From Macrostomum lignano (taxonomy: Eukaryota), in NCBI GenBank assembly GCA_002269645.1, contig NIVC01004595.1, positions 1 through 41,039 on the forward strand: a stretch of 41,039 bases of DNA, written 5' to 3'. Positions 1 to 40,980 of the stretch are shown in pieces. How positions within the stretch are numbered: the first letter of the stretch is position 1; each line of letters starts with the position of its first letter. A program made the position numbers and the translations under genes. Under the pieces are notes generated by a model. It was not told the origin of the DNA. It saw nothing but the letters and a program-made list of their open reading frames with translations, and did no database searches.

Positions 1-558
1 GCGAAAGGAGAAGATGAGTGGGAGGAGGAGAGGAGATGAAAGGAGCAAGGAAAGGAGAAAGAGAGAATGGAGAGATAGAAAAGAGAGAAGAGAAGAGACA
101 GGGGATAGTGAAAAGGAGGAGAAGATGGGAGACAAGAAAGTAGTGTCAGAGCGTATATGAAATATGAGAAATGAGAGCAGAGAGAAGAGAAAAGAGAGAA
201 GAGAGAGAGGGGTTAAGAGAGACGATAGATAAGTGATAGAGATGACATATGAGAGAGGAGAGAAGAGGGAAGATAAGAGTGAAGAGAGGAGACAGAAGAC
301 AGGAGAAGTACAGACGAAGACGAGGAGAAGAGATAAATAAGGGAGCAGAGGTAGAGATGAGATGAGAGAGAGGAGAGAGGAGATATGAGAGACTTGAGAG
401 TCTTTGAGCTATGGTCTTTGAAAGATTTTGTAAAGAATTTGGAGACGATTGGAAGATAGGGTTAAAGACATGGAATTTCAGTTGATGGATATTCATGGAA
501 TAGAATTCCGGTGATGGGAGTTCTTCCCCTTTCTCCTCCGAAGGAGGAGTTCCACTCT
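1..558 (+). mobile_element. Non-autonomous Helitron unit, 3' part (cut by window start)
   Basis: GA tract, pre-terminal GAGTCTTTGAGCTATGGTCTTTG motif, hairpin 533-549, end CTCT. Confidence 0.75.
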
Positions 559-1779
559 TAATACTAAGTTGGTGCGTTGTTTGTTTGTCTGTGTGTGTGT
601 GTGTTTGTTGGATAACTCCTCCTAGAATACTTGCAAGTCAGCGTTGAAACTTATATGGGAAAACTGCAAATTTTCCGGAGGATGGCTTTAGGCTATTTTA
701 ATCTTTCATTTTCAATTTTAAGATCCCTAAAAAAGCAGAAAATGGCGGTCTTGACCTTTGATAATCTTAATTGTCCCTCTTTCTGCTTGGAGCTGAAAAT
801 TTGCATAAATTTTAGTATTGCGCCATAAAATTTTTCTATCTTGGCAGTGTATTTTCTCTCAAGTGGGGGGATGGTCGCGTTCTCAGTGGCTGCGTGTGTA
901 CACTTGAACCCTGGCTCACTACTGACTTTATAGACAATTGCGCAACTATTTGTGTTCTGTTTTTTAACAGGAAGCCCTGTGTATTTTTTGCACAGTGAAA
1001 TTCAGTGCATTTTAATGCATAAACTTGCGAGCATCTTTAGCAGGCAGTGAACGTACACTCGATATTTCAATGCTTAAAATCAGAAAGTTTCAAACACTAA
1101 CTGTTGCTCGAGTTTTGAACTTGAGAGGAGAGACTTATATTGCTGGAAAGATCTTGCTGCATGAGTTCGGGGATATAAGTTTTTTGCTTTAAATATGAAA
1201 ATTAAATTCACAGCATTCAAGAAAAGATTTTCATACTTTTAGCTTTCTGCAAAGATTTTGCTCATTTTGGAGTTCAATGGGGGTTCGACCGACCCCCCAA
1301 TAGTTGGTGGGGGGGTTCAATTTCTAGCTGCACTGCGTATTGGAAGGGGGGTCGGTTGCTGTGTATTTGAGGGTTGATTTAGATTGCGCAATCTTTTTGT
1401 TAACTTTAACTGAGGCTGATACTGACTGCCTGAGAAATAAGTTGCGCAATTTAATTGGTTCAATGTTTTTACGGCGCCTTTCAACACGCAGCTGTCAACC
1501 CTAACCCTAACCCTAACCAATGAATTCTGAGAGCTGGGCTATTTGACGTAGAAATTTCGATTTAGTCCAGTTTCACGGAGAGGATTTCTATTTCGCGGAG
1601 AATATTTCGATGGTGTTCAGTTTCACGGAGAGGATTTCGATAGTGTTCAGTTTCACGGAGACGATTTCTGTTGCGCGGAGAGGTGTTGGAAAATGGGATT
1701 CCGCTGATGGAGTTCAGGGAATGGAATTCCGCTGATTGGAGTTCTTCCCCTTTCTTCTCCGAAGGAGGAGTTGGCCTCG
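559..1779 (+). mobile_element. Non-autonomous Helitron unit (1221 bp, no GA tract)
   Basis: Family 5' end, CCCTAA tract, minisatellite, hairpin 1754-1770, CTCG. Confidence 0.8.
1499..1516 (-). repeat. Interstitial (TTAGGG)3 tract
   Basis: (CCCTAA)3 on +. Confidence 0.9.
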
Positions 1780-2987
1780 TTAATACTAAAACTGGTGCGT
1801 TGTTTGTCTGTGTGTGTGTGTTTGTTGGATAACTCCTCCTAGAATACTTGCAAGTCAGCGTTGAAACTTATGTGGGAAAACTGCAAATTTTCCGAGGATG
1901 GCTTTAGGCTGTTTTAATCTTTTATTTTTACATTTTAAGATCCCTAAAAAAGCAGAAAACGGCAATTCTGACCTTTGATAATCTTAATTGTACCCTCTTT
2001 CTGCTCGGAGCTGAAAATTTGCATGAATTTTGAGTGATTACGCCACAACTTTTTCCTATGTCGCCAGTGCATTTACTCTCCAGTGGGGGATGGGGCGTTC
2101 TAAGTGGCTGCATGCGTACAATTGGACCCTGGCTCACCGGCAATTGCTACGGATCGATATTAGTCAACTGCAATTTGGCTTAATTGATGAATTTCGTGGG
2201 TGGTGGGTGTGAAGCGCAACGATATGGCTACTGGGTCGAGATTCAATTGGTTTTATTATCAGCGCCTTTCATTAGGAAACCCTGTGTTGAACTGTGAAAT
2301 TCAATGAATAAACTTGCGAGCCTCTCAGTGGAAAAGGCAGTGAATGTACGCACAAAAATTCAATGCTTTAAACTGGGAAGTTTTAAACGCAAAGTGTTCC
2401 TCAACTTTTAAAATTTGAGAGGAGAGACTTATATTGCTGGAAAGATCTTGCAACGCTGGTTTCAAAGATGTAAGTTGTTTGCTTTAAAAATGAAAACTTA
2501 AAGCACAGCATTCAGAAAACGATAACCATGCTTTTAACTTTCTGCAAAGATTGTACTCATTTTTGCGATACGTAATAGATAAAGTTGAGGAGTTCAATTT
2601 CTTACTGCCGCTCTGCATTGGAGGGGGGTCGGTCGCTGTGTATTGGAGGGTTTATTAAGATTGCGTAACCTTATTTTTAACTTTCAGATAAAATTGGGGG
2701 ATTGCGTTCGCACATTTAAGCCAGCTATCATTTGGAGTAATTTCAGTATTTGAGGAGTCGGGGGGGGGGTGGAGGCTCAAGTTATTTTTTTGACTAAAAT
2801 CACGTACACTGGGCCTTTACTTACACTGAACTCTTACTTAATAGCGCGAAATTCCAATTCAGTTACATTTCCTTCGATATCAGAATAGAATTTGTCTAAT
2901 ATTCCGATTGAGCTATTTCCTTATTTTTTTGTCATTTGCTTTTTGCTTTTTTGCCCATTTGCTATTCCCTATTTGCTTACTATAATA

Positions 2988-3529
2988 ATGCCAAAACGTG
3001 GTCGAGGAAGCCTTTCCCGCTCTACACGCGCTGCATCGGATGCCAAGAAGCGCAGGGCGTCGGAGACACCCGATGAGCGTGCAGCGCGCGTTGAGCGGGA
3101 GCGGCAGCATAGGGCCGAGAGAGCCGAGGGCGAAGTGGAGCGCCAGAATCGCCTCGAGTCCAATCGAATGCGCACAGCCGGAAGCCGTGAGGCCGAAGGC
3201 GAAGTGCAGCGCCAGCATCGCCTTGAGTGCAATCGACTGCGCACAGCCGGAAGCCGTGAGGCCGAAGGCGAAGTGCAGCGCCAGCATCGCCTTGAGTGCA
3301 ATCGACTCCGCTTAGCTGAAAGCCGGGATGCTGAAGGCGAGGTGGAACGCCAGAATCGGCTCGACCACGACCGGCTGCGTGCTGTCGAAAGCCGTGAAGC
3401 CGAGGAGGAGGCAGTCCATCTGCATCGCCTGGAGGCGCAGCGGCAGCGCCAGGTCCAGTATCGCGCGGCTGAGTCCGCTGAGGACCACGACCGCCGTGTA
3501 CACGCACAGGCAGAGTGGCGCCGAGACAG
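2988..3529 (+). CDS. RepHel: RepHel exon 1 (NLS-like MPKRGRG..KKRR plus 23-aa repeats)
   Basis: ATG at 2988 where GC content rises; donor AG|GTAGGG at 3530; phase 2 matches exon 2. Confidence 0.8.
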
Positions 3530-6500
3530 GTAGGGTTCCTATATAAAATTTTATTCTGCTATTCTTATGTGTGGTAGCTCATAATCTGAGACTATTAAAT
3601 TTTCTGCATGTGGATCTGGATTTTCAAGAATTCCTGATTAAAATACTCTATTTCATTACCACAGGCTGCTGGAGCTGGCACACCAGCCACATGTTCTCGG
3701 TCGCATGGACCGCCAATGCCCTCACTGCAGCGCGCTACGCTGGACGGACGAGCCAGCTAGCATTTGCTGCCATGCTGGAAAGGTGAGTTGATATTTATTG
3801 TTTTAGTTTACTTGAATTGCTGCCTCATTTATGCCTCCTGTACTGTATCAAGCCTCTGACCACCTATGGAGTCATCGACAATTGCATGATTTGCTGCAGC
3901 CCGTCTCCGCATAAAAGCTACTTCAGTTTTTTTTCTAACACTGACAGACCGTCCTGGAGCAGCGCCGAGACCCGCCTGATGTTCTGAAGCGGCTGCTGAC
4001 TGGCGAGCATCCGTTCAGCTCGCAGTTCCTGAAGGACATCAGGAAGTATAACGGCGCGCTCCATATGACCTCGCTTGGTTCCAGGCAGCGTGAACAGCCC
4101 GGGTGGAACCCCAGCTTCATCCTCCATGGTCAGATGCACCATCGGATCGGCAGCCTGTTGCCGGACCCAGGGGATGCGGCCAGGTTCTGCCAGGTCTTCT
4201 TTGTGGACCAAGAGCTGCAGAACAGACTGCAATGGACAGCAGGTCTCAACGACACTTTGCTGCAGGAGCTGCAAGCTGTTCTGCATGATTGCAACAGCTA
4301 CGTGCGCAGCCTGAAGTCCGCAGTCGACTTGCTGCGCAGCGACCCGCAGCTGCAGAGCGCCAGGGTCGTCATCAACCCCGATGCCCGCCCATCTGGGGAG
4401 CATGTCCGACGCTTCAACTTGCCCGAGTGCAGTGAGGTCGGCATCCTGACGGACCTTGGCGATGCTGATGGCGTAGTTCAGGCGCAATGGCGGAGCGTGG
4501 TTTTGCGTCTGAGAGGTGGTGGTAAGTACTTTAAGCGTCTTAAAAGACTTAAAATTTGGGTTGCATTGTAAAGTTAGATAATAAAATAAACGTTTTGGGT
4601 TATTCAGGTGTACATTTTGGTTGCTTTTGAACTGTAGTTTAGAATTAAATTACCCAACTGCATCCACAGGCCTCCAGGAGATCTCTGAGACCCATCGCTC
4701 CTACGATCCGTTGGAGTACGTGCTGCTGCTTCCGTACGGCGAGGACGGCTGGCACATTGGGCTCAAGAAGGATCGAGGCATCACCATGATGAAATACTAC
4801 GCCTACTTGATCCAGGTGCGACCAGGCCAGTTCAACAGCCTGCTGTACGGTCGCCGGCTCTTCCAGCAGTTCCTGGTGGACCAGGCTGCCAAGATCGAGT
4901 CCGAGCGACTTACGTACATCCGGCAGCACCAAACGGATCTGGTGTCCGAAAGTCTTCGGGGTCTCCGCGATGCGCTGCACGAGGACGACGGCAGGCCGGA
5001 AGAAGTCGGGAAGCGTGTCATTCTTACTTCCAGCTACGTGGGAGGTCCACGGTACCGTCTGGAGCGTCAGCAGGATGCCATGGCGTATGTTCACGCCTTT
5101 GGCCGCCCAGACCTGTTTCTGACGATGACATGCAACCCGAAGTGGCCGGAAATTCTGGCCGAGCTGCTTCCAGGGCAGACTGCCGTCGATCGGCCGGACA
5201 TCACCGCCCGGGTGTTCGAGCTGAAGAAGAAGGCCTTCTTAAACAGGCTTAAGAGTCTGTTTGGAGATACTCTGGCTCGAGTCTGCTCGCTGGAGTACCA
5301 GAAGCGAGGCAAGTGTACTTTTAAGCTTTAAACTGTAGCATTAACTGTTGGCTCCATAACTTCGTAAATTTCAATAAAATTATTGATGATCAATTATCAA
5401 TAAATTTTATCCACAACCAGGTCTTCCCCACGTGCACGCGCTGCTGTGGCTGGCGAACAAGCTGAAGCCGGATCAGTACGACGCCGTCATCAGCGCGGAG
5501 ATCCCGGACCCTGTCGCCGACGCCGACCTGCATCAGCTGGTGGCGGAGAACATGCTGCACGGTCCCTGTGGGCAGCAGCTCAACTCTGCCGCGGCGTGCA
5601 TGGAGAAAGGCAAGTGCAGCAAGCGCTACCCGAGGGAGTTCCTGGCCGCCACGAAGGTGGAGGAGGATGGCTACCCGCATTACTGCCGCAGATCCGTCGA
5701 GATGGGCGGCTTCACGGTGACGAAGCTCGCAAAGCTGCGCGGCGGTCAGAGGGTGATGTTCACCTTTGACAACCGCTGGGTGGTGCCGTACTGCCCAGCG
5801 CTGCTGCGCGAGTTTCGCTGTCACCTGAATGTCGAGATCTGCGCGACAGTTCGGGCCATCAAGTACGTGGTGAAGTACATCACCAAGGGTAGCGACATGG
5901 CAGCATACCAGATCCGTAAGGAGTCGGCGGCTGCTGCGAATGCCAGCGCTGATTCGGCCACTGAAGGACCACTGGCGATCGCCGGTCCGTCCACGTCGAC
6001 TGGGACTGCTGCTGCTGCTGCTGCGACTTCCGCAAAGCGACACAAGATCGATGAGATCGACGAATACCTACTGGGCAGGTTCATCGGTCCAATGGAGGCG
6101 GTCAACACCATCCTGGGCTTTGAGGTTCACAGCCGATACCCCCTGTGATCAGGCTCGCGGTTCATCTTAAGGACGAGCAGCGGGTCTTCTTCACAGACGA
6201 GACGGCTCAGGCTGTTGCTGCTACGCCCAAGGCCACGACTTTGACCGCCTTCTTCGATGTGAGTTTTGCAGAAAAAGTGCAATTTTTCAACTTTTTCCTC
6301 CTTCCTGTTAATTCCTGTTCTTATTCTTACCCGCCCAGCTTTGTCGCCATGACGATATCGCCCGAGGGCTGCTGTACCAGGAGGTGCCCCGGCACTTCAC
6401 CTGGGACAGAAGTGCGCACCAGTGGCATCGCGCAGGTCGCGGCCGAGTCGCTGCTGATCAGCCAGCCGATGTTCTGACGACCAGCAACATCGGCCGCATC

Positions 6501-8669
6501 TACACAGTCAGTCCACGGATGGGCGACTGTTTTTACCTGCGCCTGCTGCTGGTGAATGTGCGCGGCCCGACTTCGTTCGAGGCTCTGCGCACTGTCGATG
6601 GAGTCCTGCTGCCGACCTTCAAGGCCGCCTGCCAGGCTCGCGGACTGCTGGAAGACGACAGGCACTGGCAGCTGTGTCTGTCCGAAGCTGCCCAGACGCG
6701 GATGCCTGCTGCTCTGCGCCGACTTTTTGCCGCAATTTTGGCGCACGGCGATCCAAGCGACCCCGTGAAGCTCTGGGAGGAGTTTTCCCGCGAGATGGCT
6801 GGCGACCTGCTGCACCAGGGCTTGAGCGCCGAGGCTGCTATGGCCGAAGTGCTGCGGTCGCTGCAGAAGCGGCTGGAGCGGATGGGCGGATCCGAGCTGT
6901 CTGCCTACGGCCTTCCTCAACCACTGGCAGAGCGGATCAGTAAATAAAATCACTTCTATGCACTGACTGTTATATTTTTACCTTTATTTGCTACTGATGA
7001 CAGCTTTTCAATATCCAGACTCGGCTTCTTTCTGACTGCCTGCCGACGCCCATGAAGCTGCTGAGCTGCAGTCCGAAGTGGATGCGCTGGTCGCTACCCT
7101 GACTGACGAGCAGCGAGCTGTCTTCGAGGCCGTGCAGTCCAATCTGACGGCCGGTGGCGGCGGGCTGCATTTCATTGACGCTCCTGGAGGCACAGGCAAG
7201 ACGTTCCTGCTCACGCTTCTGCTGAAGTCGGTTCGAGCAAGACGTCAAATCGCTGTTGCCGTCGCGTCATCGGGCATCGCGGCGACTATTCTACCCGGAG
7301 GTCGGACCGCCCATCGATGTGAGTTTTGTGTCCGCATAAATATTTTATAAACTGTTATTTTTAAGCACAGAAAGTCATCCTTATTTATCCTCAAATTGAA
7401 TCCTCGCGATACCTGCCTACAGGTTCAAGATCCCCGTCTGCGCTGTACGGCAGGACAGCGCCTTCTGCTCCATCGGCAGGCGGAGCAAATTGGCGGAGAT
7501 TCTGCGGAACGCCCGCCTCATCGTGTGGGACGAGGCTCCGATGACGCACCGCAAAGACCTCGAGATCGTCGAGCGGACTCTGCGGGATTTGCTGCACGGT
7601 GGGCAGCCGTTCGGGGAGCGCTGCTGGTGCTGGCTGGCGACTTTCGGCAGTTGCTTGCTGTTGTGCCCGGAGGGACGCAGGCCAACACGATCGAAGCCTG
7701 CCTGAATCGGTCGGTGCTGTGGCCGCACTTCCGGCAGCACCAGCTCACAAGGAATCTGCGGCTGGAGGGCGGCTCGGCTCTCCAAAGCTACGCGGATTTT
7801 CTTATGCAGGTGAGAATCTCTGGAGTTTCTATGCTCTCATTAAGCATGCGAATTGAAGGAAAAAATTGTAAAATTTCATTCCACTTTTTCACCGTCAGGT
7901 TGGCAACGGGGAGCTGCCAGAGGACGTTGAGGGCATGGTCTCCTTGCCTAGCGAGATCCTTCTGCCCGAGGACACAACCACTGAGCAGCTCATCCGGCAC
8001 GTTTACCCGTCCTTTGAGCCGAGTGCGCAGCGTGACCAGATGTTCGCGGAGCGGAGCATCCTGGCGCCACTCAACAGGACGGTGGACGAGGCCAACGCCG
8101 CCTGCTTAGCGCTCTTCCCCGGTGAGAGCCGACTCTACTTATCTGTCGACTCGATTCCGAATGACGACACGGCAGCGACCAATTTTCCGCCGGAGCTGCT
8201 GAACCGGCTGGACCCCAGCGGTATGTCGCATCACCGACTGGAGCTGAAGGTCGGCATGCCGGTCGTCATGATGCGGAATCTCGACCCACCGCTGCTGTGC
8301 AACGGGACTCGGCTGCTGCTGCGTGAACTGCGTGACAACGTCCTGCTAGCGGAGGTAACCACTGGCGTCTACCGTTCGCGGCAGGTGTTCATCCCGCGGA
8401 TCCCGCAGGAGCCGAGTCCGACAGAGGTTCCGTTCGTTTTCCGCCGTCTGCAGTTCCCGATCCGGCCGTGCTTCGCCATGACCATCCACAAGAGCCAGGG
8501 CCAGTCGCTGGGCACCTACGCCGTCGACCTGACGACGGCTTGCTTTCAGCATGGCCAGCTCTACGTGGCTCTGAGTCGTGCGCGGAGTGCCGATGGCGTC
8601 AAAGTTCGGGCTCCAGGCGGACGGACGCGGAACATCGTGCTGCGCCAGCTTATCGGCAAGCAGAACTAA
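2988..8669 (+). CDS. RepHel: Helitron Rep/helicase (RepHel), 9 exons, ~1,590 aa after restoring three 1-nt deletions; one unresolved junction
   Basis: Zn-knuckle CPHC..CC; Helitron_like_N-type region; Rep motifs PDLFLTMTCNPKW, EYQKRG|LPHVHALLW and KYVVKYITKG; Walker A DAPGGTGKT; Walker B LIVWDEAP; PIF1 C-terminal FAMTIHKSQGQ and HGQLYVALSR. Exons join in phase at GT(GC)-AG sites except where noted. Frameshifts at ~6139-6144, ~7314 and ~7613-7616. Confidence 0.95.
3123..3529 (+). repeat. 69-bp coding tandem repeat (~6 copies, 23 aa each)
   Basis: Units start at 3123, 3192, 3261, 3330, 3399 and 3468, e.g. AEGEVQRQHRLECNRLRTAGSRE. Confidence 0.9.
3665..3782 (+). CDS. RepHel: RepHel exon 2 (Zn-knuckle)
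   Basis: CAG|G acceptor; reads LLELAHQPHVLGRMDRQCPHCSALRWTDEPASICCHAGK; donor GTGAGT at 3783. Confidence 0.9.
3948..4521 (+). CDS. RepHel: RepHel exon 3
   Basis: Acceptor CTGACAG; TVLEQRRDPPDVLKRLLTG..FLKDIRKYN..HGQMHHRIGSLLP; donor GTAAGT at 4522. Confidence 0.9.
4670..5308 (+). CDS. RepHel: RepHel exon 4 (Helitron_like_N region, Rep motif 1, start of motif 2)
   Basis: HRSYDPLEY..GEDGW, RLFQQFLVD, PDLFLTMTCNPKWPEI, LEYQKR; likely GC donor AG|GCAAGT at 5309. Confidence 0.9.
5421..6258 (+). CDS. RepHel: RepHel exon 5 (HUH motif, catalytic tyrosines); 1-nt deletion at 6139-6144
   Basis: GLPHVHALLWL, MLHGPCG, CSKRYPR, DNRWVVPY, HLNVE, KYVVKYITKG, DEI..GRFIG; the frame switches to VIRLAVHL..TTLTAFFD; donor GTGAGT at 6259. 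Confidence 0.9.
6339..6939 (+). CDS. RepHel: RepHel exon 6 (linker)
   Basis: CAG acceptor; LCRHDDIARGLLYQEVPRHFTW, IGRIYTVSPRMGDCFYLRLLL, GPTSFEALRTVDG, GLLEDD; probable donor GTAAAT at 6940. Confidence 0.85.
7019..7318 (+). CDS. RepHel: RepHel exon 7 (PIF1 Walker A); start uncertain
   Basis: LTDEQRAVF..FIDAPGGTGKTFLL..AVASSGIAATILPGGRTAH; donor GTGAGT at 7319. The best acceptor (CAG 7016-7018) runs into TGA at 7033-7035. Confidence 0.7.
7423..7809 (+). CDS. RepHel: RepHel exon 8 (PIF1 Walker B); 1-nt deletion at 7613-7616
   Basis: FKIP, LIVWDEAPMTHR, QPFG then a frame switch to ALLVLAGDFRQLLAVV..LTRNLRL; donor GTGAGA at 7810. Confidence 0.85.
7899..8669 (+). CDS. RepHel: RepHel exon 9 (PIF1 C-terminal domain), stop TAA
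   Basis: VGNGE, RSILAPLN, LELKVGMPVVMMRNLDPPLLCNGTRL, VFIPRI, RRLQFPIRPCFAMTIHKSQGQS, HGQLYVALSR. Confidence 0.95.
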   Translation, partial: VGNGELPEDVEGMVSLPSEILLPEDTTTEQLIRHVYPSFEPSAQRDQMFAERSILAPLNRTVDEANAACLALFPGESRLYLSVDSIPNDDTAATNFPPELLNRLDPSGMSHHRLELKVGMPVVMMRNLDPPLLCNGTRLLLRELRDNVLLAEVTTGVYRSRQVFIPRIPQEPSPTEVPFVFRRLQFPIRPCFAMTIHKSQGQSLGTYAVDLTTACFQHGQLYVALSRARSADGVKVRAPGGRTRNIVLRQLIGKQN

Positions 8670-8728
8670 CTATTATCTGAACTGAACTGAACTGAATCAT
8701 AGGCAGGATGAAAGAAATATATAGGTTT

Positions 8729-9410: not shown

Positions 9411-9429
9411 TTTGTAACATGAATAATAA

Positions 9430-12235: not shown

Positions 12236-12249
12236 TTGGCATCTTCAAT

Positions 12250-32050: not shown

Positions 32051-32082
<32 letters not shown>

Positions 32083-32516
32083 GGTTAAGAGAGACGATAG
32101 ATAAGTGAGTAGAGATGACATATGAGAGAGGAGAGAAGAAGGAGAGATAGGAGAGAAGAGAGGAGACAAGAGAGAAGTGAAGAGGAGAGATATGAGACAA
32201 GAGAGGAGACAAGAGACAGGAGAGGGTACAGACGAAAGACGAGGGTGAAGACATAAATAAGGAAGTAGGGGTAGAGATGAGATGAGAGTGAGGAGAAAGA
32301 AGAGAGTCACTATAATAGCGAAGAGAGGAGAGAGGAGATATGAGAGACATGAAAGTCTTTGAGCTATGGTCTTTGAAAGGTTTTGCAAAAAAAATTGGAG
32401 AAGATTTGGAAGATAGGGTTCAAGACATGGAATTTCAGTTGATGGATATTTCAGGAAATAGAATTCCGGTGATGGAAGTTCTTCCCCTTTCTCCTCCGAA
32501 GGAGGAGTTCCACTCG
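30228..32516 (+). mobile_element. Non-autonomous Helitron unit (2289 bp)
   Basis: TCTCTATATACTAAAG start; hairpin 32491-32507; CTCG. Confidence 0.8.
31133..31162 (-). repeat. Interstitial degenerate telomere-like tract
   Basis: CCCTGA (CCCTAA)2 CAATAA CCGTAA. Confidence 0.8.
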
Positions 32517-34376
32517 TGTATACTAAAGTTGGTGCGATGTTTGTGTGTTTGTTTGTCTGTTGCATAACTCCTCCTAGAATACTTGCAACTCAGCGTTGAA
32601 ACTTATATTGGAAAACTGCAAATTTTCCGAGGATGGCTTTAGGCTATTTTAATCTTTCATTTTTACATTTTAAGATCCCTAAAAAAGCAGAAAACGGCGG
32701 TTTTGACCTTTGATAATCTTAATTGTACCCTCTTTCTGTTTGGAGCTGAAAATTTGCATGAATTTTGAGCGATTGCGCCATAACTTTCTCCTATCTCTGC
32801 AGTGTATTTTCTCTCCAGTGGGGGGATGGTCGCGTTCTCAGTGGCTGCGTGTGTACAATCGGACCCTAGCTCACTGGCTGATTGTATAGACAATTGCGCA
32901 ACGATATGTGTTCTGATTTTCAATAGGCTGCCCTGTGTAGTTTTGGACAGTGAAATTCAATGAATAAACTTGCGAGCCTCCCACTGCTGCAGGCAGTGAA
33001 CGTACACTCGATATTTCAATGCTTTAAATCAGAAAATTTCAAATGCTAACTGTTGCTCGATTTTTTAACTTTGAGAGGAGAGACTTATATTGCTGGAAAG
33101 AGTTTGTAGCGTTGAGTTCAGGGATATAGGTTTTTTGCTTTAAATATGAAAACTAAAAGCACAGCATTCAAAAACGATTTAAATACTTTTGCAAAGATTG
33201 TACTTATTTTTGCGATAGGTTAGAGATAAAGTTGGGGGGGTTCAACTTCTACTTGCCACTGCGTATTGGAAGGGGGCGGTGGCTGTGTATTGGATGGTTG
33301 ATTTAAATTGCGCAATCATTTTGCTAACTTGAACTGAGACTGATACTGGCTGACTGAGAAATCGATTGCTCAATCTGTTGCTTCAATTAGTTCAATTTTT
33401 TATTATTGGTGCCTTTCAACACGCAGCTATGTGTAGCTCTAACCCTAACCCTAACCCTAGCCACTGAATCCTGAGAGTTGAGTTCTGTTTGACAGAGAAA
33501 ATTTCGATTGAGTCCAGTTTCACGGAGAGGATCTTTTTGTCTTCGGAGAGGAGTTGGATGATGCAACTCGGGTTATGGAATTCAGCTAATGGAGTCCAGG
33601 AAATCGAATTCCGGTGATGGGAATTCTTCCGATGCGAGAGAAAAGAGAAAAGAGAACAGAGAAAAGAGATTATAGAAAAGAGAGTAGATATGAGAGAGGA
33701 GAGATTAGAGATTAGAGAAGAGAGGGGAGAAGATGAAAGGAGCAAGGAGAGGAGAGAAGAGAGAATGAAGAGGATAGAAAAGAGAGAAGAGAAGAGACGG
33801 GGATAGTGGAAAGGAGGAAAGAAAGATGGGAGACAAGAAAGTAGAGTCTGAGAGCGTACATGAGATATGAGAAATGAGAGCAGAGAGGAGAGAAAAGAGA
33901 AGAGAGAGGGTTAAGAGAGACGATAGATAAGTGAGTAGAGATGACATATGAGAGAGGAGAGAAGAGGGAGAGATAAGAGAGAAGAGAGGAGACAGGAGAC
34001 AGAAGTGAAGAGGAGAGATATGAAAGAAGAGAGGAGACAAGAGACAGGAGAGGGTACAGACGAAAGACGAAGGAGAAGAGATACATAAGGGAGTAGAGAT
34101 AAGAGGAGAGAGAGGAGAGACTAGATATAAGATAGCAAAGAAGAGAGAGCAGAGATGAGAGACTAGAGATGGAAAGCAGATTAGAGAGAAGAGATAAGAG
34201 ACTACACTGTAGAGATGAGAGGGCAAAGAGGAGAGCAAAAAGGCTTTACAGAGGATTTGGAGATGATTTGGAAGATGGGATTCAAGTCATGGAGTTTCAG
34301 CTGATTGATTTCAGGGAATGGAATTCCGGTGATGGGAGTTCTTCCCCTTTCTCCTCCGAAGGAGGAGTTCCACTCG
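32517..34376 (+). mobile_element. Non-autonomous Helitron unit (1860 bp, contains an aborted internal 3' end)
   Basis: Family 5' end; truncated terminal segment at ~33570-33630; final hairpin 34351-34367; CTCG. Confidence 0.8.
33443..33460 (-). repeat. Interstitial telomere-like tract
   Basis: (CCCTAA)2 CCCTAG. Confidence 0.8.
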
Positions 34377-35275
34377 TATATACTAAAGTTGACGTGTTGT
34401 TTGTCTGTCTGTCTGTCATTTCGACAACTCCTCCTTGAATAGTGGCAACTCAGCGTTGAAACTTATATGGGAAGATTGGAAATTATCCGAGGTCGGCTAT
34501 AGGCTATTTTAATTCTGAAATTTTAATTTCTAAGATCCTCAAAAAAGCAGAAAACGGCGGTCTTGACCTTTGATAATCTTAATTGTCCCCTCTTTCTGCT
34601 TGGAGCTGAAAATTTGCATGAATTTCAAGTGATTGCGCCACAACTTTTCCCTATCTCTGCAGTGTATTTTCTCTCCAGTGGGGGATGGGGCGTTCTAAAT
34701 GGCTGCATGTGTACAATCGGACCCTGGCTCACCGGCTGACTGTATAGACAATTGCGCAAAGATTTGTGTTCTAATTTTCAATAGGCAGCCCTGTGTTTTG
34801 TTGAACCTTGAAATTCAATGCATAAACTTGCGGGCCTCTTTAGCAGGCAGTGAACGTACAATTGATATTTCAATGCTTTAAATCAGAAAGTTTCAAACGC
34901 AAACTGTTGCTCGAGTTTTTAACTTTGAGAGAAAAAATTAATATTGCTGGAAAGAACTTGCAAAGCTGATTTCAGGGATGTAAATTGTTTGCTTTAAATA
35001 TGAAAATAAAAAGCACAGCATTGAAAAAAACTATTTCCATACTTTTAACTTTCTGCAAAAATTGTACTCAGTTTTGCGAGACGTAATAGATAAAGTTGGG
35101 GGGGAGAGTTCAACTTCTCACTGCTGCTGTGTATTGGAGGGTTGATTTAGATTGCGCAATGTTTTTCTTAACTTTAACTGAGACTGATACTGACTGACTG
35201 AGAAATCGGTTGCGCAATCAATTGATTCAATTGGTTCAATTTTTTATTTGGACACGCAGCTGTGTGTAGCTCTAA

Positions 35276-35305
35276 CCCTGACCCTAACCCTAACAATAAC
35301 CCTAA
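35276..35305 (-). repeat. Interstitial degenerate telomere-like tract
   Basis: CCCTGA (CCCTAA)2 CAATAA CCCTAA. Confidence 0.8.
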
Positions 35306-35514
35306 CCAATGAATCCTGATATTTTATTCCTTTTTGACGGAGAAAATTTCAATTGAGTCCAGTTTAAAAGAGATAATTTCGATGGTTTTCAGTTTCACGG
35401 AAAGGATTTCGAAGGAGTCCAGTTTCACGGAGAGGATTTCGATGGTTTTCAGTTGCACGGACAGGATTTCTGCTTCGCGGAGAGGATCTTGATGGATTTG
35501 GCATCATCAATCAG

Positions 35515-36520
35515 TCAGAGAAAAGAGTAAAGAGAAGAATGAAAGCAGAAGAGAGATGAGATGATAGAAAACAGAGTAGAAATAAGTGGAGATATTAGAC
35601 ATGACAGATTGGAGAGAAGAGGGGATTTAGGCGGGAACGAAGAGGGAGAGAGAAGAAAAGAGGAGAGAGGAGAGAAAATAGATTAGGGATAAGAGCGTAC
35701 AGAGAAAATAGAAGAGAGGGGAGAGTAGAGGAGAAAGAAAGAGTGAGATGAGGGATGAGGGATGAGAGAGGAGGGGAGACAGGAGAGACAAGAAAGGAGA
35801 AAAGAGGGGAGAAAGGAGAAAGGAGAGAGTAGAGACGAAGGACCAGTTAGAAGATATAAATACGGTAGTAGAGATGAGAGGAGAGATAGGAGAGAGAAGC
35901 GAGAGAAGAAGCGAGAGGAGAAGAGAAAGAGGAGAGAGGAGAGAGATGAAATAGATAAGAGAGTTAAGAGAGGAAAGTAGTGAGGAGAGGAGAGATGAGA
36001 GATGCGATGATAAGAGATGAGTGAGAACATAAGAGAGAAGAGAGAAGAGATTAGAGAAGAGAGGGGAGAAGATAAAAGGAGCAAGGGGAGGAGAAAAGAG
36101 AGAATGGAGAGGATAGAAAAGAGAGAAGAGAAGAGACAGGGAAAAGTGGAAAGGAGGAAAGAAAGATTGGAGACAAGTAAGTGGAGTGTGAGAGCGTATA
36201 TGAGATATGAGAAATGAGAGCAGAGAGGAAAGAAAAGAGAAGAGAGAGAGGGTTAAGAGAGACGATAGATAAGTGAATAGGGATGACATATAAAAGAGGA
36301 GAGAAGAGGGAGAGATAAGAGAGAAGAGAGAAGACAGGAGACAGAAGTGAAGAGGAGAGATATGAGAGAAGAGAGGAGACAAGAGACAGGAGAGGGTACA
36401 GACGAAAGACGAGGGAGAAAACATAAATAAGGGAGTACGGGTAGAGATGAGATGAGAGAGAGGAGAGAGAAGAGAGTCACGATAATAGCACAGAGTGGAG
36501 AGAGTAGATATGAGAGACGT
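35515..36520 (+). repeat. Polypurine GA-rich low-complexity tract
   Basis: As above; homologous tracts at ~33632-34240, 37840-38870 and 39655-40620. Confidence 0.9.
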
Positions 36521-36685
36521 GAGAGTCTTTGAGCTATAATCTTTGAAAGGTTTTCTAAAGAATTTGGAGACGATTTGGAAGATAGGGTTCAAGACATGGA
36601 ATTTCAGTTGATGGATATTTCAGGGAATGGAATTCCGGTGATGGGAGTTCTTCCCCTTTCTCCTCCGAAGGAGGAGTTCCACTCG

Positions 36686-39034
36686 TCTATCTCTATACTA
36701 AAGTTGACGCGTTGTTTGTGTGTTTGTTTGTCTGTTGCATAACTCCTCCTAGAATACTTGCAACTCAGCGTTGAAACTTATATGGAAAACTGAAAATTTT
36801 CTGAGGATGGCTTTAGGCTATTTTAAAATTTCATTTTTACATTTTAAGATCCCTAAAAAAGCAGAAAATGGTGGTCTTGACCTTTGATAATCTTAATTGT
36901 CCCCTCTTTCTGTTTGGAGCTAAAAATTTGCATAAATTTTGAGTGATTGCGCTACAACTGTCTCCTATCTCTACAGTGTATTTTCTCTCCAGTGGGGGAT
37001 GGTCGCATTCTCAGTGGCTGCGTGTGTACAATCGGACCCTAGCTCACTGGCTGATTGTATAGATAGACAATTGCGCAACGATATGTGTTCTGATTTTCAA
37101 TAGGCTGCCCTGTGTAGTTTTGGACAGTGAAATTCAATGAATAAACTTGCGAGCCTCCCTCTGCTGCAGGCAGTGAACGTACACTCGATATTTCAATGCT
37201 TTAAATCAGAAAGTTTCAAACGCTAACTGTTGCTCGATTTTTGAACTTTGAGAGACGAGACTTTTATTGCTGGAAAGAGCTTGCAGCGCTGAGTTCGGGG
37301 ATATAAGTTGTTTTGCTTTAAATATGATAATAACTAAAAATACGGCATTCAAAAAACGATTTCCATACTTTTGCAAAGATTGTACTTATTTTCGACAGGT
37401 CAGAGATAAAGTTGGGGGGTTCAACGTCTACTTGCCACTGCGTATTGGAAGGGGGGCGTCGCTGTGTATTGGATGGTTGATTTAAATTGCGCAATCATTT
37501 TGTTAACTTGAACTCAGACTGATACTGACTTATTGAGAAATCGATTGCGCAATCTGTTGCTTCAATTAGTTCAATTTTTTATTATCGCTGCTTTCAACAC
37601 GCAGCTGTGTGTAGCTCTAACCCTAACCCTAACCCTAACCCTAGCCACTGAATCCTGAGAGTTGAGTTCTGTCTGACGAAGTAAATTTCGATTGAGTCCA
37701 GTTTAAAAGAGATCATTTCGATGGTGTTCAGTTTCACGGAGAGTGTTTCCGTTTCGCGGAGAGTATTTCGATTGTTTTCAGTTGCACAGACAGATTTCTG
37801 CTTCGTGGAGAGGATCTTGATGGATTTGGCATCTTCAATCAGTCAGAGAAGAGAGTAAAGAGAAAAATGAAAAGAGTAGAAAGATGAGTGGGTAGAAAAC
37901 AGAGTAGAAATGAGTGGAGAGATTAGACATGACAGATGGGAGAGAAGAGGGAGTAAGGCGGGAACGAAGAGGGAGAGAGAAGAGAAGAGGAGAGAGGAGA
38001 TGAGAGGGGAGATATGAGATAGCAAAGGGAGACAAGAGAGATAATAGGAGAGAGAATAGATGAGGGATAAGAGCGTACAGTGGAAATAAAGAGAAAGGAG
38101 AGTAGAGGAGAAAGAAAGAGTGAGATGAGGGATGAGAATGAGAGAGGAGGGAGAGAGAAGAGAGGAGAAAAGAGGGAGAGAAAGGACACAGGAGAGAGTA
38201 GAGACGAAAACCAGGGAGAAGATATAAAAAGGTAGTAGAGATGAGAGGAGAGAGAGGAGAGAGAAGCGAAAGGAAAGAGAGAGAGAGAGAGAGAAAGATG
38301 AAAGATGAGAGATGAGAGAGTTAAGAGAGGAAAGTAGTGAGGAGAGGAGAGATGAGAGATGCGATGAGAAGATATGAGTGAGTACATGAGAGAACAGATT
38401 AGAGATTAGAGAAGAGAGGGAAGAAGATAAAAGGAGCAAGGAGAGGAGAAAAGATACAATGGAGAGGATAGAAAAGAGAGAAGAGAAGAGACATGGGATA
38501 GTGGAAAGGAGGAAAGACAGATGAAAGATAAGAAGTAGAGTGTGAGAGCGTATATGAGATATGAGATATGAGAGCAGAGAGGAGATAAAAGAGAAGAGAG
38601 AGAGGGTTAAGAGAGACGATAGACAAGTGAGTAGAGATGACATATGAGAGAGGAGAGAAAAGGGAGAGATAAGAGAGAAGAGAGGAGACAGGAGACAGAA
38701 GTGAAGAGGAGAGATATGAGAGAAGAGAGGGACAAGAGAAGAGAGGGTACAGACGAAAGACGAGGGAGAAGAGATAAATAAGAGAGTAGGGTAGAGATTA
38801 GATGAGAGAGAGGCGAGAGAAGAGAGTCACGATAATAGCGAAGAGAGGAGAGAGGAGATATGAGAGACGTGAGAGTCTTTGAGCTATGGTCTTTGAAAGG
38901 TTTGTAAAGAATTTGGAGACGATTTGGAAGATAGGGTTCAAGACATGGAATTTAAGTTGATGGATATTTCAGGGAATAGAATTCCGGTGATGGGAGTTCT
39001 TCCCCTTTCTCCTCCGAAGGAGGAGTTCCACTCG
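36686..39034 (+). mobile_element. Non-autonomous Helitron unit (2349 bp)
   Basis: TCTATCTCTATACTAAAG start; hairpin 39009-39025; CTCG. Confidence 0.8.
37621..37644 (-). repeat. Interstitial telomere-like tract
   Basis: (CCCTAA)3 CCCTAG. Confidence 0.85.
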
Positions 39035-40783
39035 TCTATTATACTAAAGTTGACGCGTTGTTTGTCTGTCTGTCTGTCTGTGTGTGTGTGTGTCATTTCG
39101 ACAACTCCTCCTTGAAATAGTGGCAACTCAGCGTTGAAACTTATATGGAAGATTGGAAATTATCCGAGGTCGGCTATAGGCTATTTTAATTCTGAAATTT
39201 TAATTTCTAAGATCCTCAAAAAAGCAGAAAACGGCGGTCTGACCTTTGATAATCTTAATTGTCCCCTCTTTCTGCTTGGAGCTGAAAATTTGCATGAATT
39301 TTAAGTGATTGCGCCATAAAATTTTGCTACCTTGGCAGTGTATTTTCTCTCCAGTGGGGGATGGGGCGTTCTAAATGGCTGCATGTGTACAATCGGACCC
39401 TGGCTCACCGGCTGACTTTATAGACAATTGCGCAAAGATTTGTGTTCTAATTTTCAATAGGCAGCCCTGTGTTTTGTTGAACCTTGAAATTCAATGCATA
39501 AACTTGCGGGCCTCTTTAGCAGGCAGTGAACGTACAATTGATATTTCAATGCTTTAAATCAGAAAGTTTCAAACGCAAACTGTTGCTCGAGTTTTTAACT
39601 TTGAGAGAAAAAATTAATCAAGAGGATCTTGATGGATTTGGCATCATCAATCAGTCAGAGAAAAGAGTAAAGAGAAGAATGAAAGCAGAAGAGAGATGAG
39701 ATGATAGAAAACAGAGTAGAAATAAGTGGAGATATTAGACATGACAGATTGGAGAGAAGAGGGGATTTAGGCGGGAACGAAGAGGGAGAGAGAAGAAAGA
39801 GGAGAGAGGAGAGAAAATAGATTAGGGATAAGAGCGTACAGAGAAAATAGAAGAGAGGGGAGAGTAGAGGAGAAAGAAAGAGTGAGATGAGGGGATGAGG
39901 GATGAGAGAGGAGGGGAGACAGGAGAGACAAGAAAGGAGAAAGAGGGGAGAAAGGAGAAAGGAGAGAGTAGAGACGAAGGACCAGTTAGAAGATATAAAT
40001 ACGGTAGTAGAGATGAGAGGAGAGATAGGAGAGAGAAGCGAGAGAAGAAGCGAGAGGAGAAGAGAAAGAGGAGAGAGGAGAGAGATGAAATAGATAGAGA
40101 GTTAAGAGAGGAAAGTAGTGAGGAGAGGAGAGATGAGAGATGCGATGATAAGAGATGAGTGAGAACATAAGAGAGAAGAGAGAAGAGATTAGAGAAGAGA
40201 GGGGAGAAGATAAAAGGAGCAAGGGGAGGAGAAAAGAGAGAATGGAGAGGATAGAAAAGAGAGAAGAGAAGAGACAGGGAAAAGTGGAAAGAGGAAAGAA
40301 AGATTGGAGACAAGTAAGTGGAGTGTGAGAGCGTATATGAGATATGAGAAATGAGAGCAGAGAGGAAAGAAAAGAGAAGAGAGAGAGGGTTAAGAGAGAC
40401 GATATATAAGTGAATAGGGATGACATATAAAAGAGGAGAGAAGAGGGAGAGATAAGAGATAGAGAGAAGAGAGGAGACAAGAGACAGGAGAGGGTACAGA
40501 CGAAAGACGAGGGAGAAAACATAAATAAGGAGTACGGGTAGAGATGAGATGAGAGAGGAGAGAGAGAAGAGAGTCACGATAATAGCACAGAGTGGAGAGA
40601 GTAGATATGAGAGACGTGAGAGTCTTTGAGCTATGGTCTTTGAAAGGTTTTCTAAAGAATTTGGAGACGATTTGGAAGATAGGGTTCAAGACATGGAATT
40701 TCAGTTGATGGATATTTCAGGGAATGGAATTCCGGTGATGGGAGTCCTTCCCCTTTCTCCTCCGAAGGAGGAGTTTCCACTCT
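39035..40783 (+). mobile_element. Non-autonomous Helitron unit (1749 bp, internal deletion)
   Basis: TCTATTATACTAAAG start; ~540 bp missing at ~39619; hairpin 40757-40773; end CTCT. Confidence 0.8.
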
Positions 40784-40980
40784 CTTAATACTAAAAGTGG
40801 CTGCGCTGTTTGTTTGTCTGTATGTGTGTTGCAATTTTTCTCCTAGACTACTGACAAGTCAGCGTTAAAACTTATATGGGAAAACTGCAAATTTTCCGGA
40901 TTGGGTTTATAGCTATTTTAATCTTTAGGTTTTATATTTTAAGATCCCTAAAAAAGCAGAAAACTGATTTCCTAACCTTC
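40784..40980 (+). mobile_element. Diverged, truncated 5' fragment of a further unit
   Basis: CTTAATACTAAAAG, GTTT/GT microsatellite, AAGATCCCTAAAAAAGCAGAAAA; similarity is lost after ~40980. Confidence 0.65.

What the first reader, a model, noticed from the sequence alone, without database searches (positions are those of the whole stretch)
1..40980. A 41-kb head-to-tail Helitron array with its own autonomous RepHel element as one of the monomers
Seen: 17 co-oriented junctions (hairpin, ~5 nt, CTCG or CTCT, then (TC)TATATACTAAAG and a GTCT/GT microsatellite) divide the window into 15 complete 1.1-2.8 kb units, two partial units and one 9.1-kb unit (1780-10875) carrying the spliced Rep/PIF1 gene. 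That unit has the same 5' arm and 3' hairpin as the short units. Known: Helitrons start with TC, end with a hairpin plus CTRR, and tandem Helitron arrays have been reported. Inference: what looks like satellite DNA is an engine-plus-cargo system in which the embedded RepHel could mobilise and extend the array.
Basis: partly seen in the sequence, partly recalled or inferred. Interest (0 to 1): 0.85.

Follow-up and report, generated by a model that had tools for sequence, protein, structure and literature searches.

The report
Head-to-tail Helitron array in a flatworm
The whole 41-kb window is a same-direction, end-to-end chain of rolling-circle transposon (Helitron) copies from a Macrostomum-type flatworm; one copy carries a nearly complete transposase gene, which makes this a clear new example of a known way in which transposons turn into satellite-like DNA.

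Summary
Seventeen co-oriented junctions (7-bp-stem hairpin, 5-6 nt, CTCG/CTCT, 2-9 variable nt, ATACTAA...) cut the window into 15 short units (1.1-2.8 kb), one 9,096-bp unit (1780-10875) and two partial units; none is expected by chance.

The long unit encodes a canonical RepHel protein: 9 exons and 8 short introns, with the HUH motif, both catalytic tyrosines and the Pif1-type helicase motifs all present. Its closest named relatives are Macrostomum lignano proteins (85-89% identity).

As assembled, the reading frame is broken by 3 to 6 single-base deletions. All lie in or beside G/C runs, and there are no stops or insertions. This looks like long-read consensus error, so "autonomous" is neither shown nor refuted.

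The short units are internal-deletion derivatives. They carry a (CCCTAA)n tract, a 30-bp minisatellite and a long GA-rich tract.

Precise end-to-end joints need a Helitron-type event. The units are also mosaics of 98-100% identical blocks with changing partners, so recombination has done much of the recent reshaping.

Tandem Helitron arrays are already known in plants, bats, nematodes and cnidarians. This is a new member of a known kind. The "engine-plus-cargo" reading stays untested.

The parts
1..558 (+). U00, partial unit: GA-rich tract plus 3' arm, hairpin 533-549, end CTCT
559..1779 (+). U01, short unit (1,221 bp), 5' arm group B, (CCCTAA)n at 1500-1518, 30-bp minisatellite 1539-1668, no GA tract
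1780..10875 (+). U02, 9,096-bp RepHel-bearing unit: 5' arm 1783-2684, gene 2988-8669, 16-20-bp satellite 8728-9403, unique 9404-10544, arm-homologous 10545-10733, 3' terminal 10786-10875 (hairpin 10850-10866, CTCG)
2988..8669 (+). RepHel gene. Exons: 2988-3529, 3665-3782, 3948-4521, 4670-5308, 5421-6258, 6339-6939/6940, 7058 or 7019-7318, 7423-7809, 7899-8666, then the stop codon. Introns are 78-165 nt and GT-AG, except intron 4, which is GC-AG. Model of ~1,577-1,591 aa. Zn-finger-like CPHC...CCHAGK; HUH motif LPHVHALLW; tyrosines KYVVKYITK; Walker A GGTGKT; Walker B IVWDEAP.
6138..6142 (+). Frame break 1: C5 run where M. lignano paralogues need C6 (RYP-P-VIRL)
6933..7051 (+). Region of uncertain structure. 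One option is a canonical GT-AG intron at 6940-7057 (model 1). The other, by collinearity with M. lignano P0132, needs three more single-base gaps: at ~6933, at the donor G at 6940, and in the C3 run at 7049-7051 (model 2).
7318..7423 (+). Frame break at the exon 7/8 joint: donor T|GTGAGT and acceptor CAG|G leave the codon one base short (TAHR-x-FKIPV)
7613..7616 (+). Frame break: G4 run where paralogues need G5 (PFG-G-ALLVLAGDF)
2614..2705 (+). Left copy of a ~90-bp direct repeat that flanks the coding part of U02. The short units hold one hybrid copy.
10626..10710 (+). Right copy of the same direct repeat
10876..13366 (+). U03 (2,491 bp), 5' arm group A, (CCCTAA)n 11801-11825, GA tract
13367..15911 (+). 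U04 (2,545 bp), group C, (CCCTAA)n 14265-14294
15912..17490 (+). U05 (1,579 bp), group C, (CCCTAA)n 16801-16830, 23-bp repeat 17175-17405, no GA tract
17491..19469 (+). U06 (1,979 bp), group A, (CCCTAA)n 18414-18449
19470..21543 (+). U07 (2,074 bp), group A, internal duplication in the 5' arm, (CCCTAA)n 20859-20888
21544..23847 (+). U08 (2,304 bp), group A, (CCCTAA)n 22442-22476; ~99% identical to U14 over its whole length
23848..26674 (+). U09 (2,827 bp), group A, triplicated 5'-arm segment, (CCCTAA)n 25673-25702
26675..29105 (+). U10 (2,431 bp), group A/B mosaic, (CCCTAA)n 27599-27634
29106..30227 (+). U11 (1,122 bp), divergent (group C-like), (CCCTAA)n 30017-30034, no GA tract
30228..32516 (+). 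U12 (2,289 bp), 5' arm group B with a majority-type 3' arm, (CCCTAA)n 31140-31151
32517..34376 (+). U13 (1,860 bp), group B 5' arm, (CCCTAA)n 33439-33456
34377..36685 (+). U14 (2,309 bp), group A, twin of U08, (CCCTAA)n 35272-35307
36686..39034 (+). U15 (2,349 bp), group B 5' arm, (CCCTAA)n 37617-37643
39035..40783 (+). U16 (1,749 bp), group A 5' arm to about +577, then a GA tract 98-99% identical to that of U08/U14; lacks the telomere-type tract and the minisatellite; ends CTCT
40784..41039 (+). U17, partial unit: 5' arm only

Best explanation
The window is a tandem, same-orientation array of copies of one canonical (Helraiser-type) Helitron family in a Macrostomum-type flatworm genome.

One copy (1780-10875) is a near-complete RepHel-coding element. 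The other fifteen complete copies are non-autonomous derivatives. In these, the coding part has been lost between two ~90-bp direct repeats. The region just upstream of the 3' arm has gained a short (CCCTAA)n tract, a 30-bp minisatellite and a polypurine tract of 0-1 kb.

Each copy ends with a 7-bp-stem hairpin, then 5-6 nt, then CTCG. It is joined with 0-9 variable bases ((TC)n(TA)n-like) to the next copy's 5' end, T(C)TATATACTAAAG.

Inferred step 1: an end-to-end joint with no host DNA cannot arise by ordinary duplication of dispersed copies. The first joints were therefore made by a Helitron-specific event. Two candidates are rolling-circle read-through or concatemer formation (the same 3'-end|5'-end joint as in a Helitron circle), and insertion at the A|T formed by a host A and the T that begins a resident copy.

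Inferred step 2: after that, the array grew and was reshuffled mainly by unequal exchange and gene conversion between units, as in satellite DNA. Copying of single units by the Helitron machinery may have contributed.

Whether the embedded RepHel gene is functional today is open.
For: Array and junctions: 17 of 17 co-oriented junctions against 0 expected.

Hairpin: it is conserved in position. Loops vary (GAA, AGC, ATC, AAC, GAAA). The stem is kept in 15 of 17 junctions and altered in two (CTTCTCC, CTCCGCC).

RepHel:
- Pfam Helitron_like_N, PIF1 and Pif1_2B domains.
- Nine exons with GT/GC-AG introns; exon GC 0.62 against intron GC 0.35.
- The Rep domain aligns to Helraiser 7LCC at E=6e-87, with the HUH motif and both tyrosines conserved.
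- The gene lies on the same strand as the 5'-to-3' element orientation.

Derivation of the short units: arm homology, and the direct repeat present twice in U02 but once in the short units.

Host: 85-89% amino-acid identity to M. lignano proteins.

Recombination:
- 5'-arm groups (A, B, C) and 3'-arm groups are discordant.
- The nearest neighbour switches along units.
- Blocks of at least 97.5% identity end at internal positions (+400, +518, +880, +1104/-342).
- The TAT-type junction travels with the group A 5' arm.

Unit-wise copying:
- U08 and U14 are ~99% identical from -68 to +1 of their junctions, while their flanks are only 70-86% identical.
- The J03/J09 block starts at -3.

Prior knowledge:
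- Helraiser circles join CTAG directly to TC, and the terminal 40 nt carry the cleavage determinants (PMC4778049).
- Tandem Helitron arrays are reported in plants and bats (PMC5876387), in nematodes (PMC9071541) and in cnidarian subtelomeres (PMC11934779).
Against: - No flank of the array lies in the window, so the A|T target and the absence of a target-site duplication were never seen.
- No dispersed copy could be found; two metagenome scans gave 0 hits.
- The 3' end is CTCG, not CTRR.
- Ten of 17 junctions lack TC after CTCG.
- Breakpoints near junctions could simply reflect recombination favouring the best-conserved ~70 nt, or HSPs cut by the variable filler and microsatellite.
- The hairpin is only modestly more stable than shuffles (z -1.4 to -3.0) and shows no compensatory changes.
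- The assembly of such an array cannot be checked without reads.
Confidence: 0.6

Rival explanations
1. Active engine-plus-cargo system. The RepHel copy inside the array is functional. By rolling-circle replication from the array, it currently makes new units and lengthens the array.
For: - The gene has no stop codon or large deletion, and all catalytic motifs are kept.
- Every frame break is a single-base deletion in or beside a G/C run. This is the pattern of long-read consensus error.
- 34 of the last 40 nt of U02 match the majority 3' end.
- The U08/U14 twin pair is bounded by the element ends.
- 7 of 17 joints are CTCG|TC, the form of a Helitron circle joint (PMC4778049).
Against: - As assembled, the frame is broken 3-6 times.
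- U02's 5' end is TTAATAC, without TC.
- U02's arms are among the most divergent in the array: 3' arm 65-78% and 5' arm 70-91% identical to the other units.
- Most near-identical blocks have internal ends and changing partners, which recombination explains and unit transposition does not.
- No expression or polymorphism data are available.
Confidence: 0.2
2. Serial targeted insertion. The array was built copy by copy, as independent Helitrons of several subfamilies inserted into A|T sites at or within the (TA)n 5' terminus of a resident copy.
For: - Units of three 5'-arm groups are interleaved.
- The fillers fit this model at some joints. J08 reads CTCG-TCTA-TATATAC and J09 reads CTCG-TATATAC, as expected if U08 went into TCTA|TATATAC of U09. 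J15 reads TCTA-TCTCTATAC.
- A host A plus the element's first T recreates an AT target at every 5' boundary (inference from the AT target in PMC4778049).
Against: - The predicted TCTA remnant is missing upstream of most TAT-type joints (J02, J05, J13).
- The (TC)n(TA)n filler can equally be explained by slippage.
- Mosaic units show that recombination has occurred in any case.
Confidence: 0.1
3. Chromosome-end addition. Units were added one after another to a chromosome end, with telomerase adding (TTAGGG)n between additions. Alternatively, Helitrons inserted into telomeric repeats, as proposed for Paramecium.
For: - 14 of 15 short units hold (CCCTAA)2-6, all in the same polarity and on the Helitron sense strand. 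This is the same polarity relation described for Paramecium Helitrons (PMC13085455).
- Helitron-like arrays are subtelomeric in cnidarians (PMC11934779).
Against: - The tract lies ~880-920 nt inside the unit, not at the element ends.
- It is flanked on both sides by sequence conserved among units, so it was inherited from a common ancestor and not added each time.
- The RepHel unit and U16 lack it.
- No terminal telomere lies in the window.
Confidence: 0.04
4. Assembly artefact. Dispersed Helitron copies were wrongly chained by the assembler.
For: - The sequence shows signs of uncorrected single-base deletions.
- Long repeats are hard to assemble.
Against: - Seventeen joins all fall exactly at element ends with no host DNA.
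- The units differ in length (1.1-9.1 kb), in subfamily and in junction filler.
- A collapse or mis-join would not produce this.
Confidence: 0.03

Closest known systems
Canonical animal Helitrons (Helibat1 / reconstructed Helraiser)
   Same: - RepHel protein with an N-terminal zinc-finger-like motif, HUH, two tyrosines and an SF1B Pif1-like helicase; the Rep domain aligns at E=6e-87.
- A 3' hairpin ~10 nt before the end.
- An A/T-rich 5' end starting with T(C).
- Non-autonomous deletion derivatives that share the termini.
   Different: - The 3' end is CTCG rather than CTAG.
- The 5' TC is missing in many copies.
- The gene has 8 introns.
- The copies are chained end to end instead of being dispersed at A|T sites. 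That target could not be examined here.
Tandem Helitron arrays attributed to rolling-circle replication in plants and bats (cited in PMC5876387 and PMC11934779; Xiong et al. 2016) and in nematodes (PMC9071541)
   Same: Head-to-tail copies with direct 3'-end/5'-end joints. Satellite-like appearance.
   Different: Here a near-complete RepHel copy sits in register inside the array. The units are heterogeneous mosaics of several subfamilies, and each carries a telomere-type tract. I did not read the primary plant and bat papers, so finer differences are not established.
Subtelomeric Helitron-like repeats of cnidarians (HSymSHlR in Hydractinia, NveSHlR in Nematostella; PMC11934779)
   Same: Tandem arrays of Helitron-derived units of variable length (median ~2.1 kb), associated with minisatellites and with local amplification.
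   Different: - Those units are degraded, with only partial Helitron affinity and no coding copy in the arrays.
- Their position is known to be subtelomeric, whereas the position of this array is unknown.
Paramecium telomere-capping Helitrons (PMC13085455)
   Same: C-strand telomeric repeats on the Helitron sense strand. Many satellites lie between the ORF and the ends.
   Different: There the repeats flank the element ends, as insertion into telomeres predicts. Here the tract is internal and inherited.
Helentron/DINE-type elements carrying satellites (Drosophila DINE-TR1; oyster Helentron-associated satellites, PMC7492417)
   Same: Rolling-circle elements with internal tandem repeats that seed satellite DNA.
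   Different: - Those belong to the Helentron/Helitron2 branch and have terminal inverted repeats.
- In them the repeat is an internal short monomer, not the whole element.
- No terminal inverted repeat and no endonuclease domain is present here.

Membership tests
Canonical Helitron (HLE1) | RepHel protein: HUH nuclease with two catalytic tyrosines fused to an SF1B (Pif1-like) helicase | tested here: met
   Pfam Helitron_like_N at 1.8e-52, plus PIF1 and Pif1_2B. Alignment to Helraiser 7LCC conserves LPHVH and KYVVKY. Walker A and B motifs are present. The frame as assembled is broken 3-6 times.
Canonical Helitron (HLE1) | 5' terminus begins with TC | tested here: inconclusive
   7 of 17 junctions read CTCG|TC...; 6 read CTCG|T(A/G)TATAC; 4 read ...TTAATAC or ...CTTAATAC. 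The RepHel unit itself has no TC.
Canonical Helitron (HLE1) | 3' terminus CTRR | tested here: not met
   15 ends read CTCG and 2 read CTCT, that is CTYR/CTYY. Non-CTRR ends such as CTTG are documented for maize Helitrons and for Helraiser (PMC4778049), so the deviation is mild.
Canonical Helitron (HLE1) | Short hairpin about 10-12 nt upstream of the 3' end | tested here: met
   A 7-bp stem with a 3-4 nt loop ends 9-10 nt before the last base in 17 of 17 copies. It is the predicted MFE structure in 3 of the 5 variants folded.
Canonical Helitron (HLE1) | Insertion between host A and T without target-site duplication | not testable with these tools
   No array flank lies in the window. No dispersed copy could be retrieved.
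Canonical Helitron (HLE1) | No terminal inverted repeats (unlike Helentron/Helitron2) | tested here: met
   The 5' end TATATACTAAAGTTG and the reverse complement of the 3' end (CGAGTGGAACTCC) are unrelated. Only a subterminal CTCCTCC motif at about +55 echoes the hairpin.
Helentron | C-terminal AP-endonuclease domain | tested here: not met
   The protein ends after the helicase at 8666, and no further domain was found.
Tandem Helitron array | Successive complete elements in the same orientation, joined 3' end to 5' end without host DNA | tested here: met
   17 joints with 0-9 nt of (TC)n(TA)n-like filler.
Autonomous Helitron | Uninterrupted RepHel reading frame | tested here: inconclusive
   There are 3 (model 1) to 6 (model 2) single-base deletions, all at G/C runs, with no stops. 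The pattern fits consensus error, but reads are needed to decide.
Telomere-targeting Helitrons (Paramecium type) | Telomeric repeats directly flanking both element ends | tested here: not met
   The (CCCTAA)n tract lies ~880-920 nt inside the units and is absent from the RepHel unit.

The most novel reading that the evidence does not exclude
The array is a living, self-extending Helitron satellite. In this reading the embedded RepHel is intact and the frame breaks are consensus errors. It copies single units bounded by hairpin-CTCG, as the U08/U14 twins suggest. The family, whose units carry telomere-type repeats in one polarity, builds or buffers chromosome ends in a flatworm that still has telomerase. 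That would parallel the subtelomeric Helitron expansions of cnidarians and the telomere-capping Helitrons of Paramecium.
Probability: 0.12. Interest if true: 0.75.

Novelty: new member of a known kind. Interest (0 to 1): 0.42.

Why it matters
How transposons turn into satellite DNA is usually reconstructed from degraded remains. Here the parts are all still readable in one locus: a near-complete RepHel copy, its deletion derivatives, precise end-to-end joints, and clear recombination mosaics.

The host appears to be Macrostomum, a laboratory flatworm that has transgenesis and inbred lines. The roles of rolling-circle copying and of unequal exchange in array growth could therefore be separated experimentally.

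No description of a Helitron array in Macrostomum turned up in the literature searched.

There is also a practical warning. ORFs in this assembly seem to carry single-base deletions at G/C runs.

Tried and rejected
- Two metagenome scans, one with the 3' terminal motif and one with the 5' terminal motif, found no match. The dispersed-copy and A|T test could not be done.
- The termini were sought in related loci L001-L006 and gave no match. These loci are 63-68% identical relatives from unnamed sequencing runs.
- An M. lignano contig, L007 (NIVC01000958), was fetched. It holds a different Helitron family (52% amino-acid identity) and has no array or junction motif.
- A full-text search for the terminal sequences returned only irrelevant hits.
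- The supplement of the cnidarian paper is not held, so NveSHlR and HSymSHlR could not be compared.
- Rfam and tRNA scans found nothing.
- Pfam on the N-terminal 412 aa, including the 23-aa repeats, gave no hit even at E<=1.
- A BLAST self-comparison with a 96-97% identity filter returned only the self-hit, because HSPs extended into divergent sequence. It was replaced by stricter scoring.
- Telomerase addition at each unit was considered and rejected, because the tract is internal and sits at a homologous position in all units.
- A Helentron/Helitron2 classification was rejected: there are no terminal inverted repeats and no endonuclease domain, and the Rep domain is close to Helraiser.
- My first gene model placed intron 6 at 6940-7057. 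Collinearity with M. lignano P0132 suggests a different structure with more single-base gaps. Both models are reported.

Full report
**What is in the sequence**

The + strand carries 17 copies of a composite junction. Each consists of a hairpin CTCCTCC-GAA-GGAGGAG, then TTCCA or TTGGC, then CTCG (15 times) or CTCT (2 times), then 2-9 variable bases, then ATACTAAAGTTG(A/G)(C/T)GCG.TGTTTGT and a GTCT/GT microsatellite. The pattern GGAGGAGTT-N3-4-CTC-N1-12-ATACTAA matches 17 times on + and never on -. It matched 0 times in 100 shuffles.

Taking the last base of CTCG as the element end gives 15 short units of 1,122-2,827 bp, one unit of 9,096 bp at 1780-10875, and two partial units at the window edges.

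**Anatomy of a short unit**

- About 880-920 nt of unique 5' arm.
- A (CCCTAA)2-6 tract. This is the TTAGGG-type telomere repeat, with the C-strand on +.
- A 30-bp minisatellite (TTTCACGGAGAGGATTTCGATGG...).
- A polypurine (GA-rich) tract of 0 to ~1 kb.
- A ~130-nt 3' arm that ends in the hairpin and CTCG.

The telomere-type tract is present in 14 of the 15 short units. It always has the same polarity and the same homologous position, and it is flanked by conserved sequence on both sides.

**The long unit**

Its first ~900 nt (1783-2684) and last ~90 nt are homologous to the arms of the short units. Between them lies a RepHel gene on the + strand. Pfam finds Helitron_like_N (1.8e-52), PIF1 and Pif1_2B.

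Reading the frame switches against a 63-68% identical relative (L001) shows a 9-exon gene with 8 introns of 78-165 nt. The introns are GT-AG, except for one GC-AG with a consensus gag|GCAAGT. Exon GC is 0.62 and intron GC is 0.35.

The ~1,580-aa model has:
- a zinc-finger-like CPHC...CCHAGK;
- the HUH motif (LPHVHALLW);
- both catalytic tyrosines (KYVVKYITK), aligned to Helraiser Y727/Y731 (PDB 7LCC, E=6e-87);
- Walker A GGTGKT and Walker B IVWDEAP.

There is no endonuclease domain and there are no terminal inverted repeats. The element therefore belongs to the canonical Helitron branch, not to Helentron/Helitron2.

**Is the gene intact?**

Not as assembled. Three -1 frame breaks are unavoidable:
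- the C5 run at 6138-6142;
- the exon 7/8 joint (7318/7423);
- the G4 run at 7613-7616.

The last-exon protein is 89% identical to Macrostomum lignano A0A1I8G2F6, and two further M. lignano proteins are 85-89% identical. These paralogues read RYP-P-VIRL and PFG-G-ALLV at two of the breaks, so the window is one C and one G short there.

Collinearity with M. lignano P0132 (AYGLP..PDQT.RL.DCLPT.EEA.ELQ) suggests three more single-base gaps, at about 6933, at the donor G at 6940, and in the C3 run at 7049-7051. The alternative is a canonical intron at 6940-7057 that skips this stretch.

All 3-6 defects are single-base deletions in or beside runs of G or C. There is no insertion, no premature stop and no larger lesion. 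That is the signature of uncorrected long-read consensus error rather than of ordinary decay, but only reads can decide. "Autonomous" is therefore undecided, at roughly even odds.

**Relation of long and short units**

U02 holds a ~90-bp direct repeat on both sides of the coding part (2614-2705 and 10626-10710). The short units hold one copy. Its left part continues from the 5' arm, and its right part continues as in the second U02 copy. This is what deletion between the repeats would leave.

The short units are thus deletion derivatives of a U02-like element. They later acquired, once, the telomere-type tract, the minisatellite and the GA tract in the ~50-nt interval that U02 has at 10734-10785. 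Because the tract is internal and inherited, repeated telomerase addition or insertion into telomeres (the Paramecium model, PMC13085455) does not explain it.

**How the array behaves**

The 5' arms fall into three groups:
- group A: U03, U08, U09 and U14 are ~100% identical; U06, U07, U10 and U16 are 91-97% identical to them;
- group B: U01, U02, U12, U13 and U15;
- group C: U04, U05 and U11.

Most 3' arms are 90-99% alike whatever the 5' group. U01, U02, U04, U05 and U11 are divergent.

In a sliding comparison, the nearest neighbour of a unit changes every few hundred bases, often at 98-100% identity. Blocks of at least 97.5% identity end at internal positions: +400, +518, about +880 (the telomere tract), and +1104/-342. 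These mosaics require unequal exchange or gene conversion (or template switching), as in satellite DNA. The TAT-type filler travels with the group A 5' arm, so junctions are inherited by duplication and not made anew each time.

Two observations point the other way:
- U08 (21544-23847) and U14 (34377-36685) are five units apart and ~99% identical over the whole unit, including the GA tract. The identity stops at the very last base of CTCG, while the neighbouring units are only 70-86% alike.
- The 99% block shared by J03 and J09 starts 3 nt before the joint.

This fits copying of single units bounded by the element ends. It could also be a conversion tract whose ends fell in the best-conserved 70 nt, so it is suggestive only.

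**Origin of the joints**

A joint of 3' end to 5' end with no host DNA is the joint found in Helraiser circles (CTAG|TC, PMC4778049). Duplication of dispersed copies does not produce it. I infer that the first joints came from a Helitron-specific event. One candidate is rolling-circle read-through or concatemer formation. The other is insertion at the AT target that a host A and the element's first T recreate at every 5' boundary.

The variable (TC)n(TA)n filler can be read as slippage or as traces of insertion into the (TA)n terminus. J08/J09 and J15 fit the insertion reading; J02, J05 and J13 do not.

**Comparison with what is known**

Tandem Helitron arrays and head-to-tail joints have been reported in plants and bats (PMC5876387 and PMC11934779, citing Xiong 2016). 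Long tandem tracts made by Helitrons are noted in nematodes (PMC9071541). Xenopus Helitrons form small arrays (PMC12001565). Helitron-like units of ~2 kb form subtelomeric arrays in Hydractinia and Nematostella (PMC11934779).

The present locus differs in four ways. It holds a near-complete coding copy in register. It is built of several interleaved subfamilies. Each unit carries a telomere-type tract. It comes from a flatworm, for which I found no such report. These are differences of detail, so I file it as a new member of a known kind.

**Limits**

- No array flank, no dispersed copy, no reads, no expression data and no chromosomal position were available.
- Two metagenome scans for the termini were empty.
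- The species is inferred only from protein identity to M. lignano. The window itself is not in the protein collection, so it may be a diverged paralogue or a sister species.

Noticed in passing
window 3114-3403: Exon 1 of RepHel contains a 69-bp tandem repeat, about 4 copies at 77-88% identity. It encodes a 23-aa unit (AEGEVQRQHRLECNRLRTAGSRE), charged and helix-like, just upstream of the zinc-finger-like motif. Pfam gives no hit even at E<=1.
   Followed up: partly
window 8728-9403: A 16-20-bp satellite (TGAGTGACAAATTATGAGAG, ~35 copies in higher-order 42/60/65-bp patterns) starts 60 nt after the RepHel stop codon. It occurs only in the long unit. Sequence 9404-10544 is also unique to that unit.
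   Followed up: no
window 1500-1518, 11801-11825, 14265-14294, 16801-16830, 18414-18449, 20859-20888, 22442-22476, 25673-25702, 27599-27634, 30017-30034, 31140-31151, 33439-33456, 35272-35307, 37617-37643: Interstitial telomere-type (CCCTAA)n tracts, one per short unit, all with the C-strand on the Helitron sense strand. They are absent from the RepHel unit and from U16. They sit at a homologous internal position, so they were inherited and not added anew. Their origin (capture of subtelomeric DNA?) is unexplained.
   Followed up: partly
window, about +50 to +60 of every unit (e.g. 17551-17560, 1843-1852): A conserved AACTCCTCCT (or ATCTCCTCCT) motif lies just after the 5' microsatellite in 16 of 17 units. 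It equals the 5' half of the 3' hairpin stem and is complementary to AGGAGGAGTT at the 3' end. It may be a second binding or pairing site for the transposase.
   Followed up: no
window 12341-13112, 14646-15702, 22776-23560, 27933-28896, 35611-36398, 38089-38774 and others: Polypurine (GA-rich) tracts of up to ~1 kb, always purine-rich on the + strand, give the window a steadily rising GC skew. Their length differs greatly between units (0 to ~1 kb). Such tracts can form triplex DNA and may promote exchange.
   Followed up: no
window 6138-6142, ~6933, 6940, 7049-7051, 7318/7423, 7613-7616: Every interruption of the RepHel frame is a single-base deletion in or next to a run of G or C. If these are consensus errors, other reading frames in this assembly are likely to be affected in the same way.
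   Followed up: partly
window 5309-5420: Intron 4 has a GC-AG boundary (gag|GCAAGT...CCAG|g). The HUH motif is split just downstream of it.
   Followed up: no
window 19470-21543 (U07) and 23848-26674 (U09): A ~400-450-bp segment of the 5' arm is present twice in U07 and three times in U09. This accounts for part of their extra length.
   Followed up: no
window 17175-17405: A 23-bp tandem repeat (TTTTGCGGTGAGGAGTTGGATGA, 10 copies, 98% identical) occurs in U05 only. It is a very recent local expansion next to the 3' arm.
   Followed up: no
L001 5736-6835 (Logan SRR31628435): The nearest non-Macrostomum relative (63-68% amino-acid identity) has fewer introns and a downstream ORF with a weak RPA-like OB-fold match. 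The window's element has no counterpart of that ORF (tblastn negative).
   Followed up: partly
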